Part shown: in pieces, positions 29,017-29,880 of the stretch
How positions within the stretch are numbered: position 1 is the first letter of the stretch
Layout of the letters: each line of letters starts with the position of its first letter
IMG/VR virus record: IMGVR_UViG_3300046665_000548
Location: 1 to 64,000 of that record
Length of the DNA stretch: 64,000 nt
Reading direction: 5' to 3' (one strand)
The notes under the pieces: model-generated
The model's database searches: none
Told to the model about the DNA's origin: nothing
What the model saw: only the letters and a program-made list of their open reading frames with translations
Translations under genes and position numbers: made by a program

Positions 29017-29880
29017 ATGGAGGTTGCCTATGTCCTCGCGGGACGCCTGATCACTCGATACCAAGATTATTGCGAACAACATGGTATCGAGTTTTCCATC
29101 AACCGGTCGCTAACGCCACCGGATTCTACTACCCTATTCTGTTCATCTGGAATGCAGCGTTTGAAACCGCTCTTTTCAGATCAATCACACAGAGGGGTAA
29201 TCGCCAACGTTCAATCGTGTTTGCGTCTAGTTGACCTAGATGAAATTGGCGACAGCACACATTTCCTTTACTTCAAAATGATCGGTCTGTTTTCCTTCCG
29301 TCAGCTTACGGTCAAGGATGCTATAGACTTTTGGCTCGGTTTCCTTGGGGAGATCGGACTGCCGGTCGATTACGTGACCATACATCCTGACAAAATGGAT
29401 GAATGGTCTCCGCTTTATGAAGGGCGGGTACCGATTCGTCCCGACCCCGAATGTACGTGGTCTGATGGAAATATCTCCGGGTATTGCACCGAGTTTTACA
29501 GCCAAGACGTGGAAATCGGAAACATCGTCAACCCGCTTGGGACCTGCATTGATGTTGGCTTTGGCCTCGAACGTCTAGATATGCTTTTGAATGGAACGCC
29601 GAAGCCACCGGCAAACGATGTGCTGGTGGAGTCGATCATGACTATTATCGAAAGCGGATATCGCCCCGGCAACAAGGAACAGGGATACGTTCTCAGAAAG
29701 CTTTTGCGCAAACTGCACAAGGACGGAGGATCACTTGATCATCCGTTTTTTCTCAGTGAGATAGAGCGCCAGGAGCGGTTGCGATCCAGCTATGAGCGTC
29801 TTCGTCGCAAGAACCCTGACAAGTCTCCAGAGTGGTGGTTCGCCACACACGGCATTGACGTGAAGGAGTTTGGTACTTAA
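29017..29880 (+). CDS. alaS: Truncated alanyl-tRNA synthetase-like protein (no editing or C-Ala domains)
   Basis: DSTTLFCSSGMQ, QSCLRLVDLDEIGD, FKMIGLFSF, IDVGFGLERL, GNKEQGYVLRKLLR. Confidence 0.85.
   Translation: MEVAYVLAGRLITRYQDYCEQHGIEFSINRSLTPPDSTTLFCSSGMQRLKPLFSDQSHRGVIANVQSCLRLVDLDEIGDSTHFLYFKMIGLFSFRQLTVKDAIDFWLGFLGEIGLPVDYVTIHPDKMDEWSPLYEGRVPIRPDPECTWSDGNISGYCTEFYSQDVEIGNIVNPLGTCIDVGFGLERLDMLLNGTPKPPANDVLVESIMTIIESGYRPGNKEQGYVLRKLLRKLHKDGGSLDHPFFLSEIERQERLRSSYERLRRKNPDKSPEWWFATHGIDVKEFGT

What the first reader, a model, noticed from the sequence alone, without database searches (positions are those of the whole stretch)
29017..29880. 287-aa mini-AlaRS that has lost the G3:U70-reading Asp
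Class II motifs are retained, but the editing and C-Ala domains are absent. Established: AlaRS reads G3:U70 with the Asn of SNxxRGYVLR and the Asp of LYDTYG. Here the Asn is kept (GNKEQGYVLR) but LYDTYG aligns to WFATHG. The suppressor at 4091 starts GGGG, has A73 and has the wobble moved to G4:U69. Inference: a natural orthogonal synthetase/amber-tRNA pair.
Basis: partly seen in the sequence, partly recalled or inferred. Interest (0 to 1): 0.8.

Follow-up and report, generated by a model that had tools for sequence, protein, structure and literature searches.

The report
Minimal alanyl-tRNA synthetase in huge phage
The gene is a real, very small relative of alanyl-tRNA synthetase from a family common in large phages and in Rhizobium; comparison with relatives does not support the idea that it is a private partner for the phage's amber-suppressor tRNA, and does not exclude it either.

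Summary
ORF 29017-29880 encodes a 287-aa AlaRS catalytic core plus a stub of the acceptor-stem-recognition domain, with no editing or C-Ala domain. Profile-profile alignment confirms that Asn219 matches the AlaRS Asn and Ala276 sits where AlaRS has the Asp of LYDTYG. tRNA 4091-4178 has a CUA anticodon, G3:C70, G4:U69 and A73.

The "orthogonal pair" inference is weak.
- The protein belongs to a large family (over 1000 database homologues, at least 80 IMG/VR phage contigs, many Rhizobiaceae).
- The family consensus keeps the Asp (EWWxDTHGID): 115 of the 120 closest homologues have it, including the 88%- and 80%-identical sister phages. Ala276 is a private one-base change.
- Members with Gly, Glu, Ser or Asn at that site sit beside canonical G3:U70 tRNA-Ala genes.
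- No other member is linked to a G4:U69 suppressor, and no homologue of tRNA 4091 was found.
- Published AlaRSs that lack both Asn and Asp still require G3:U70.

Best reading: a proofreading-free minimal AlaRS that acts on ordinary tRNA-Ala. One coincidence remains and needs biochemistry: tRNA 4091 has a tRNA-Ala-like acceptor, D and T arms with the G:U shifted by one pair, and the enzyme carries a private change at the 3:70-reading residue.

Side finding: the annotated ATG is not conserved. A conserved six-codon leader ORF overlaps the 5' end of the gene.

The parts
29017..29880 (+). Mini-AlaRS ORF (287 aa as annotated): AlaRS catalytic core plus a shortened acceptor-stem-recognition domain; no editing or C-Ala domain
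29671..29673 (+). Codon for Asn219, aligned with the AlaRS Asn (E. coli Asn303) that reads G3:U70; variable within the family
   Evidence: PMC8583063
29842..29844 (+). Codon GCC for Ala276, at the position of the AlaRS Asp (E. coli Asp400). The family consensus is Asp, one base away (GAC)
29020..29024 (+). GGAGG Shine-Dalgarno-like sequence inside the annotated ORF, 5 nt upstream of the leader ATG
29030..29050 (+). Conserved six-codon leader ORF (MSSRDA-stop) in the +1 frame. Its stop overlaps main-frame codon 11 (CTG)
28998..29012 (+). Hairpin GGGCC-N5-GGCCC directly after the TAG of the upstream ORF; also present in sister phage L001, but not statistically unusual
28210..28998 (+). Upstream multi-HTH ORF (262 aa) that ends in TAG, in frame with the mini-AlaRS ORF six codons later. 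Judged coincidental
4091..4178 (+). Amber-suppressor tRNA (CUA) with tRNA-Ala-like acceptor, D and T arms, G3:C70, G4:U69, A73, a variable-arm insert and encoded CCA
4180..4256 (+). Second amber-suppressor tRNA (CUA) with G73 and an Asn/Lys-like body, in tandem with the first
4262..4290 (+). GC-rich hairpin followed by a T-run (terminator-like) that closes the two-tRNA unit
   Evidence: sequence read directly
33519..34520 (+). Full-length tryptophanyl-tRNA synthetase, a second phage aaRS and an alternative candidate partner for a suppressor

Best explanation
The ORF encodes a member of a widespread but uncharacterised family of minimal alanyl-tRNA synthetases of about 280-320 aa. The family is found mainly in large phages, with one clade in Rhizobiaceae and related alphaproteobacteria. 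The protein keeps the whole alanine/ATP active site and the two short elements that touch the 3:70 region of the acceptor stem in AlaRS: the GYVLRKLLR helix and the WWxDTHGID turn. [quoted passage not shown]

Most likely mechanism (inferred): it makes Ala-AMP and transfers alanine to the acceptor stem of ordinary G3:U70 tRNA-Ala, from host and/or phage, without proofreading. This would supplement alanylation during infection.

Ala276 is a private substitution at a position that is variable across the family and dispensable in other AlaRSs. It is not good evidence for a new tRNA identity. The amber suppressor at 4091 has tRNA-Ala-like acceptor, D and T arms. Moving its G:U from 3:70 to 4:69 more probably takes it out of AlaRS recognition than creates a private pair. 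Who charges it is unknown.
For: Homology and active site:
- Pfam PF01411 is above its cut-off.
- hhalign against true AlaRS gives probability 100%, E = 1.8e-62, with all AlaRS-invariant catalytic residues kept.
- The confident AF2 model (pLDDT 94) matches AlaRS catalytic fragments best, including structures with Ala-SA or ATP plus Ala.

Family size and spread:
- 1089 homologues in the first database search.
- 50 clusters at 50% identity with E < 1e-30.
- 86 relatives in IMG/VR.
- In a tree, the window's clade is sister to the alphaproteobacterial clade, and both are nested in phage sequences.

tRNA context in phages:
- 33 of 79 loci have tRNA genes within 10 kb.
- tRNA-Ala is the commonest isotype there (33 genes in 16 loci), and 27 of the 33 show G3:U70 and 32 show A73.
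- tRNA-Ala lies 0-505 nt from the gene in L025, L026, L033 and L054 and about 370 nt from it in LR745206.
- In LR745206 the gene is flanked by another mini class II core, tRNA-Gly, a G3:U70 tRNA-Ala and Thg1.

The Asp position:
- Asp in 115 of the 120 nearest homologues, and in sister phages L001 and L307.
- Members with Gly, Glu, Ser or Asn at that site sit beside G3:U70 tRNA-Ala genes.

Literature:
- Tupanvirus and C. elegans mitochondrial AlaRS lack both Asn and Asp yet are G3:U70-specific (PMC10036535).
- Charging of G4:U69 tRNAs is reported for eukaryotic, not bacterial, AlaRS (PMC8583063).
Against: - No biochemistry exists for any family member.
- After removing near-duplicate loci, the closeness of tRNA-Ala to the gene is not significant (within-locus label shuffle P = 0.36). 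The gene is associated with tRNA clusters generally, and Ala is only nominally the top isotype.
- In this window the gene is not in a tRNA cluster and no tRNA-Ala gene is present. The other 544 kb of the genome were not seen.
- Bacterial and archaeal AlaRS are reported to need C-Ala-mediated dimerisation for tRNA charging (PMC8583063), and this protein lacks C-Ala and much of the recognition domain.
- The N. equitans alpha subunit, which has a partial recognition domain, charges weakly and without G3:U70 specificity (PMC10036535). Specificity here could therefore be relaxed.
- A private change at an otherwise 96%-conserved residue, in the same genome as a tRNA-Ala-like suppressor with a shifted G:U, remains unexplained.
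Confidence: 0.55

Rival explanations
1. The mini-AlaRS, through its Asp-to-Ala change, reads G4:U69 instead of G3:U70 and specifically alanylates the CUA tRNA at 4091. The host AlaRS ignores that tRNA, so the two form a natural orthogonal pair that inserts Ala at TAG.
For: - tRNA 4091's acceptor, D and T arms are closest to phage tRNA-Ala. The 5' strand GGGGAUG is identical to that of the L028 tRNA-Ala, and the 3' strand differs only by swapping C69/U70 to U69/C70.
- A73 and G2:C71 are kept.
- AlaRS does not read anticodons (PMC8583063).
- Ala276 lies exactly at the 3:70-reading Asp and is a change at a 96%-conserved site.
- Precedents for moved or lost G:U identity with co-adapted enzymes exist: Drosophila mitochondrial G2:U71, human mitochondrial AlaRS, and human AlaRS on G4:U69 (PMC10036535, PMC8583063; PDB 5KNN).
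Against: - The closest relatives keep the Asp.
- Non-Asp members pair with G3:U70 tRNA-Ala neighbours.
- There is no co-occurrence of the family with G4:U69 suppressors.
- No homologue of the tRNA exists in IMG/VR or JGI metagenomes, so covariation cannot be tested.
- The gene and the tRNA are 25 kb apart.
- The anticodon arm is unlike that of tRNA-Ala and is the arm shared by unrelated phage suppressors.
- The variable-arm insert is common in these phages' tRNAs, so it is not a special handle.
- No conserved gene in the window needs TAG read-through.
Confidence: 0.12
2. The protein activates alanine but does not charge tRNA. It either hands Ala-AMP to another acceptor (carrier protein, small molecule, nucleic-acid modification pathway) or acts as a regulatory or decoy protein.
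For: - About 170 residues of the AlaRS aminoacylation domain, and C-Ala, are missing.
- C-Ala dimerisation is reported as needed for tRNA charging by bacterial AlaRS (PMC8583063).
- The Rhizobium copies are solo genes with no tRNA nearby.
- aaRS paralogues with non-tRNA acceptors are known (own knowledge: SerRS-like amino acid:carrier-protein ligases, AsnA, PoxA).
Against: - Both acceptor-stem-contacting elements are retained and nearly invariant: W274, T277, G279 and the GYVLRK helix.
- No carrier-protein, NRPS or transferase gene is a conserved neighbour.
- Many phage copies lie inside tRNA gene clusters.
- There is no PADLOC defence-system hit.
Confidence: 0.2
3. It is a relaxed-specificity acceptor-stem alanylating enzyme. 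With a truncated recognition domain it charges several tRNAs or tRNA-like RNAs irrespective of the exact G:U position, and tRNA 4091 would be one substrate among others.
For: - The N. equitans AlaRS alpha subunit, which has a partial recognition domain, charges without G3:U70 specificity (PMC10036535).
- Both the Asn and Asp positions are poorly conserved across the phage family.
- Some neighbouring tRNA-Ala(GGC) genes carry both G3:U70 and G4:U69 (L033, L054, L088).
Against: - Indiscriminate alanylation would be toxic.
- 27 of the 33 neighbouring Ala-anticodon tRNAs keep G3:U70, which suggests the determinant is still under selection.
- There is no direct evidence.
Confidence: 0.13

Closest known systems
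Tupanvirus mini-AlaRS (TuAlaRS, 461 aa; PMC10036535)
   Same: [quoted passage not shown] It is missing canonical G3:U70-reading residues and acts through the acceptor stem only.
   Different: TuAlaRS keeps the complete catalytic and tRNA-recognition domains and derives from its amoebal host's AlaRS. The protein here is 287 aa, with about 170 further residues deleted. It belongs to a separate phage/alphaproteobacterial clade and has not been tested.
Canonical bacterial AlaRS aminoacylation fragment (E. coli 1-441/461; PDB 3HXU, 9JC7)
   Same: Same fold and the same Ala-AMP-binding residues. The Asn helix and the Asp turn align.
   Different: Missing here are the motif-2 loop insert, the insertions between motifs 2 and 3, about 30 residues after motif 3, most of the helical recognition domain, the editing domain and C-Ala. 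The Asp is Ala in this copy.
Nanoarchaeum equitans split AlaRS alpha subunit (as described in PMC10036535)
   Same: [quoted passage not shown]
   Different: The N. equitans subunit works with a beta subunit that restores activity and G3:U70 specificity. No partner gene is conserved next to this family.
AlaRS systems with displaced or lost G:U identity (Drosophila mitochondrial G2:U71; human mitochondrial AlaRS; human cytosolic AlaRS on G4:U69; PMC10036535, PMC8583063, PDB 5KNN)
   Same: They show that AlaRS and tRNA can co-evolve away from G3:U70.
   Different: All are full-length eukaryotic or organellar enzymes. Charging of G4:U69 tRNAs is reported as absent from bacterial AlaRS. No co-variation between enzyme and tRNA could be shown here.
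Database family named 'alanine--tRNA ligase-related protein' (NCBI/UniRef names in Rhizobium, Ensifer, Agrobacterium, Hoeflea, Inquilinus)
   Same: 66-72% identity over the full length, the same length class, and the same conserved 5' leader arrangement.
   Different: The bacterial copies keep the Asp and sit alone between pdxA-like and FGGY-kinase genes. This copy is in a 608-kb phage and carries Ala276.

Membership tests
Alanyl-tRNA synthetase (class IIc; Pfam PF01411 / TIGR00344 alaS) | Class II catalytic core with the AlaRS-specific Ala/ATP-binding residues (motif-2 Arg, the Asp and Gly of the DxGxGxER motif-3 region, and the Trp, Asn and Val of the alanine pocket) | tested here: met
   PF01411 72.6 bits against a cut-off of 30.3. 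hhalign probability 100%. R70, W148, E159, E166, N169, V171, D179, G181, G183 and R186 are invariant or nearly invariant in the family and match AlaRS invariants.
Alanyl-tRNA synthetase (class IIc; Pfam PF01411 / TIGR00344 alaS) | Complete tRNA-recognition domain with the Asn and Asp that read G3:U70 | tested here: not met
   The domain is cut to about 100 residues. Asn219 is present, but the Asp position is Ala276. The family consensus keeps the Asp.
Alanyl-tRNA synthetase (class IIc; Pfam PF01411 / TIGR00344 alaS) | Editing domain and C-Ala domain | tested here: not met
   The protein ends at residue 287. TIGR00344 gives 73 bits against a cut-off of 457, with only profile positions 5-165 of 847 matched.
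Alanyl-tRNA synthetase (class IIc; Pfam PF01411 / TIGR00344 alaS) | Alanylation of G3:U70 tRNA-Ala | not testable with these tools
   Only indirect evidence: canonical tRNA-Ala genes lie next to family members in several phages, and this is not statistically distinct from the other isotypes in the same clusters.
Phage/Rhizobiales mini-AlaRS family ('alanine--tRNA ligase-related protein') | Length of about 280-320 aa, full-length similarity, and the motifs TTLFCxAGMQ, QxCLRxxDLDxIGD, EIGNIVNP, IDVGFGLERL, GYVLRKLLR and EWWxDTHGID | tested here: met
   66-88% identity over 83-100% of the length to named members. All motifs are present, with one substitution (D276A) in the last. The tree places it in the family.
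Viral mini-AlaRS in the sense of Tupanvirus TuAlaRS | Intact catalytic plus intact tRNA-recognition domains (about 460 aa), derived from the host AlaRS | tested here: not met
   287 aa, with large deletions relative to the AlaRS 441-residue fragments. The family is separate from housekeeping AlaRS, which score far lower.
Dedicated (orthogonal) synthetase / suppressor-tRNA pair, as in PylRS-tRNAPyl | Co-inheritance of the synthetase with its special suppressor tRNA across genomes | tested here: not met
   Of 79 other phage loci, only L096 has CUA tRNAs within 10 kb, and those have unrelated bodies with no G:U at 3:70 or 4:69. No homologue of tRNA 4091 was found elsewhere. The bacterial members have no tRNA nearby.
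Dedicated (orthogonal) synthetase / suppressor-tRNA pair, as in PylRS-tRNAPyl | In-frame TAG codons in conserved genes that need the pair | tested here: not met
   No conserved gene in the window or in sister contig L001 carries an internal TAG. TAG ends about 11% of ORFs, 10 of 89. Only 64 of 608 kb were examined.
Dedicated (orthogonal) synthetase / suppressor-tRNA pair, as in PylRS-tRNAPyl | The suppressor is not a substrate of host synthetases but is a substrate of the dedicated enzyme | not testable with these tools
   G3:C70 removes the AlaRS determinant by rule (PMC8583063). Charging by other host enzymes or by the phage TrpRS cannot be assessed in silico.

The most novel reading that the evidence does not exclude
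The phage carries a naturally evolved orthogonal pair. A 287-aa minimal AlaRS, through its private Asp276Ala change and/or its truncated recognition domain, alanylates a tRNA-Ala-derived amber suppressor whose G:U has moved to 4:69. The host AlaRS ignores that tRNA, so the phage alone can read TAG as alanine.
Probability: 0.12. Interest if true: 0.85.

Novelty: new variant of a known kind. Interest (0 to 1): 0.5.

Why it matters
If the family is active, it would be by far the smallest natural alanyl-tRNA synthetase, about 60% of the size of the smallest characterised one. It would show how little protein is needed to read an acceptor stem, which bears on minimal and primordial synthetase models and on compact enzymes for engineering. 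Its abundance in large phages, beside tRNA genes and other cut-down synthetase cores, points to a viral toolkit of proofreading-free charging enzymes. The present evidence makes that unlikely but cheap to test.

Tried and rejected
1. Genome-wide TAG reassignment. Stop usage is TAA 48, TGA 31, TAG 10. No conserved gene has an internal TAG, and read-through extensions have lengths expected by chance. Rejected for this window.

2. Read-through fusion of the HTH ORF (ends in TAG, in frame) with the mini-AlaRS. In sister phage L001 the HTH gene is inverted and not adjacent, and no natural HTH fusions exist. Judged a coincidence.

3. A "TAG-gated" mini-AlaRS. In L001 and L307 the codon at the window's ATG is TAG, which first looked like amber-dependent expression. 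The better explanation is that this codon is not translated at all. It is AAG in bacteria and forms part of a conserved Shine-Dalgarno sequence for a six-codon leader ORF, and distant family members start near residue 9-11.

4. Search for homologues of tRNA 4091, for a covariation test. An acceptor-stem pattern found only the source contig in IMG/VR and four unrelated tRNAs in JGI metagenomes. An anticodon-arm pattern found unrelated suppressors.

5. Search for a canonical tRNA-Ala elsewhere in the same 608-kb contig.

6. Statistical enrichment of tRNA-Ala next to the gene. Nominally the top isotype, but not significant after de-duplication (P = 0.36).

7. Phage TrpRS as a clue to suppressor charging. 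tblastn returned mostly host-like fragments and was uninformative.

8. A short C-terminal query against PDB sequences gave only chance hits. The profile HMM placed the C-terminal motif on a different AlaRS helix. hhalign and the Foldseek alignment span settled this in favour of LYDTYG.

It was redone without that row.

10. Defence-system libraries gave no hit for the mini-AlaRS.
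Full report
**What is there.** ORF 29017..29880 (+) is real and encodes 287 aa.
- It passes the Pfam AlaRS model (PF01411, 72.6 bits against a gathering cut-off of 30.3). It scores far below the full-length alaS equivalog (73 bits against 457), matching only the first 165 or so of 847 profile positions.
- PDB sequence searches hit only AlaRS N-terminal fragments.
- A 51-sequence family profile aligns to a 16-sequence profile of genuine AlaRS N-terminal halves with probability 100%, E = 1.8e-62, over 309 columns.
- In that alignment PGNKEQGYVLRK lies on PSNxxRGYVLRR, and the family motif EWWxDTHGID lies on the LYDTYGFP motif.
- The columns invariant in AlaRS around Ala-AMP are invariant or nearly so in the family: R70, W148, E159, E166, N169, V171, D179, G181, G183, R186.
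- An AlphaFold2 model is confident (pLDDT 94, pTM 0.88). Its best PDB matches are AlaRS catalytic fragments (TM-score 0.73-0.75 on the query), with alignments spanning almost the whole 441-residue E. coli fragment.
[quoted passage not shown] - The sequence gives G1:C72, G2:C71, G3:C70, G4:U69, A5:U68, U6:A67, G7:C66, A73 and an encoded CCA, plus a roughly 18-nt variable region. The description in the finding is accurate.
- A second CUA tRNA (G73) follows at 4180-4256, then a terminator-like hairpin.
- I compared tRNA 4091 with 374 tRNAs from the phage loci gathered here. Its acceptor, D and T arms are most like tRNA-Ala (best and mean scores highest for Ala). One tRNA-Ala (L028) has the identical 5' strand GGGGAUG and a 3' strand that differs only by C69U70 in place of U69C70.
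- Its anticodon arm is the least Ala-like part. It is the same arm found on many unrelated phage suppressors.
- Variable-arm inserts are common in type-I tRNAs of these phages (Glu, Gly, Met, Asn, Arg, Cys), so the long arm carries little identity information.

**Where the window comes from.** It is the first 64 kb of a 607,744-bp IMG/VR contig. The four tRNAs seen are therefore a small sample of the genome. The surroundings are replication and auxiliary genes of a huge phage (DnaB-like, RecA/UvsX-like, gp32-like, ClpB-like, radical SAM, a carbamoyltransferase). A full-length TrpRS lies at 33519-34520.

**The family.**
- The first database search returned 1089 homologues. Many are named "alanine--tRNA ligase-related protein" in Rhizobium, Sinorhizobium/Ensifer, Agrobacterium, Hoeflea, Phyllobacterium and Inquilinus, at 66-72% identity over the full length.
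- An exhaustive search found 50 clusters at 50% identity with E < 1e-30 before true AlaRSs begin.
- IMG/VR holds at least 86 relatives, on contigs from 4 kb to over 600 kb.
- In a maximum-likelihood tree (midpoint root, for drawing only), the window, its 88%-identical sister (L001) and an 80%-identical phage (L307) form a clade. That clade is sister to the alphaproteobacterial clade, and both are nested among phage sequences.
- In Rhizobium the gene is a solo gene at a conserved position between a pdxA-like gene and an FGGY kinase, with no tRNA nearby. In one strain toxin-antitoxin modules and an ABC-transporter cluster are inserted next to it.
- The 245-aa database versions are start-codon mis-calls.
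- I found no paper that characterises this family. The closest is the 461-aa Tupanvirus mini-AlaRS (PMC10036535).

**Test of the inference "Asp lost, therefore re-aimed at G4:U69".**
- Among the 120 nearest homologues, 115 have Asp at this position, including both sister phages (WWFDTHGID). The window's GCC is one base from GAC. Ala276 is a private change, not a family trait.
- Among the 80 IMG/VR loci (this contig included) the position varies: D 53, E 10, N 4, S 3, A 2, Q 2, G 1, and 5 not scored. The Asn position is even less conserved (P 19, N 12, T 7 and others, with 23 not scored).
- Members with Gly (L025), Glu (L036, L088, L103), Ser (L081, L095) or Asn (L060/65/91) at the Asp site have canonical tRNA-Ala genes in their flanks. 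L025 has tRNA-Ala genes abutting the gene and 505 nt away.
- Of 33 flanking tRNA-Ala genes, 27 show G3:U70 and 32 show A73.
- In the 634-kb phage LR745206 the gene (Asp kept) is followed by tRNA-Gly and a G3:U70 tRNA-Ala. It is flanked by a 246-aa class II core and by Thg1.
- CUA tRNAs near a family member were seen only in L096, and they have no G:U at 3:70 or 4:69.
- No homologue of tRNA 4091 exists in the collections I could scan, so enzyme-tRNA covariation cannot be tested.
- Published work shows that TuAlaRS and C. elegans mitochondrial AlaRS lack both residues yet are G3:U70-specific. Mutating the replacement residues in TuAlaRS has little effect (PMC10036535).

**What keeps the idea alive.**
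- AlaRS does not read anticodons.
- The capacity to charge G4:U69 tRNAs is reported for eukaryotic but not bacterial AlaRS, so the host enzyme probably ignores tRNA 4091 (PMC8583063).
- Shifted or lost G:U identity with co-adapted enzymes exists in mitochondria.
- The N. equitans alpha subunit, with a partial recognition domain, is not G3:U70-specific (PMC10036535).
- A private change at a 96%-conserved residue that contacts 3:70, in the same genome as a tRNA-Ala-like suppressor with the G:U moved by one pair, is a coincidence I cannot explain away. I give the pair reading about 0.12.

**Limits of the positive case.** The association with tRNA-Ala is suggestive only. After removing near-duplicates, 26 loci have tRNAs and Ala lies within 2 kb in 7 of them. 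Gly does so in 6, and Asp, Glu, Arg and Ile in 5 each. A within-locus label shuffle gives P = 0.36. What is solid is that many phage copies sit in tRNA clusters, and that the active site and both acceptor-stem elements are conserved. Whether a protein this short can charge tRNA without C-Ala is untested. Bacterial AlaRS is reported to need C-Ala dimerisation (PMC8583063), whereas TuAlaRS does not (PMC10036535).

**The gene's 5' end.**
- The upstream HTH ORF ends in TAG and is in frame with the mini-AlaRS. In L001 that gene is inverted and not adjacent.
- In L001 and L307 the codon at the window's ATG is TAG; in bacteria it is AAG.
- Across 13 loci (3 phage, 10 bacterial) a 36-nt block is almost invariant, including main-frame third positions. 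It contains GGAGG followed 5-6 nt later by an ATG in the +1 frame. That ATG opens M-[S/T]-[S/P/Q]-R-D-A-stop. The stop is TGA or TAA, always at the same place, and it overlaps a main-frame CTG or ATA at codon 11.
- The bacterial N-terminal extensions upstream are unconserved, and distant family members begin at about residue 9-11.
- The simplest reading is a strongly translated leader ORF, with the synthetase started near codon 11, perhaps by termination-reinitiation. This removes any need for amber read-through. The mechanism is an inference, and a leader that ends in an Ala codon is only a hint of regulation.

**Verdict.** The protein is a new, much smaller variant of the known mini-AlaRS kind and a member of an uncharacterised but already catalogued family. 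The orthogonal-pair interpretation is not supported by comparative evidence, though it is not excluded.

Noticed in passing
window 29020-29050; also L001, L307, L003, L021, L023, L108-L114: A conserved Shine-Dalgarno sequence plus a six-codon leader ORF (M-S/T-S/P/Q-R-D-A-stop) overlaps the 5' end of the mini-AlaRS gene in the +1 frame. Its stop (TGA or TAA) always overlaps a main-frame CTG or ATA at codon 11. The annotated ATG (29017) is TAG in two sister phages and AAG in bacteria, so the real start is probably downstream.
   Followed up: partly
window 28210-29019: The multi-HTH ORF ends in TAG, and exactly six in-frame codons later the mini-AlaRS ATG follows. With two amber suppressors in the genome, a 556-aa fusion is formally possible. 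The arrangement is not conserved in the sister phage, and no natural fusions were found.
   Followed up: yes
window 1944-2020: A tRNA with an 8-nt anticodon loop (ARAGORN calls a four-base anticodon GGAA) and an encoded CCA. It could be a quadruplet-decoding or aberrant tRNA.
   Followed up: no
window 4180-4256: A second amber-suppressor tRNA (CUA, G73) lies in tandem with the first. It is 80% identical to a CUA tRNA of the cultured 469-kb Sinorhizobium phage Phosso and to tRNA-Asn/Lys genes of other phages.
   Followed up: partly
window 33519-34520: A full-length tryptophanyl-tRNA synthetase (TIGR00233, 299 bits against a cut-off of 177), also present in sister contig L001. In another huge phage (L019) a CUA suppressor is clearly a tRNA-Trp copy with a variable-arm insert, so TrpRS-suppressor links deserve a look.
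   Followed up: partly
L020 (LR745206 364,800-370,200): A row of cut-down translation genes sits inside a tRNA cluster: a 246-aa class II core (tRNA-synt_2b), the mini-AlaRS, tRNA-Gly(GCC), a G3:U70 tRNA-Ala(UGC) and a Thg1-like guanylyltransferase.
   Followed up: partly
L020, L025, L033, L060, L065, L088, L091 and others: Many type-I tRNAs in these phages (Glu, Gly, Met, Asn, Arg, Cys) carry 10-15-nt inserts in the variable region, which makes them 85-92 nt long. Some tRNA-Ala(GGC) genes have both G3:U70 and G4:U69.
   Followed up: no
L004-L019 (IMG/VR): Ten otherwise unrelated phage amber-suppressor tRNAs share the identical 17-nt anticodon arm CCGGUCUCUAAAACCGG, which suggests convergence on an efficient suppressor arm.
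   Followed up: no
window 22000-29000 versus L001 1-3200: Between the window and its sister phage, a roughly 2.1-kb block of three genes (146 aa, 256 aa, HTH) is inverted and a roughly 3-kb block (including the DnaB-like gene) is absent. One breakpoint lies at the small hairpin just upstream of the mini-AlaRS.
   Followed up: no
L307 10781-12037: In the 80%-identical relative, an IS605 OrfB/TnpB-like gene sits immediately downstream of the mini-AlaRS.
   Followed up: no
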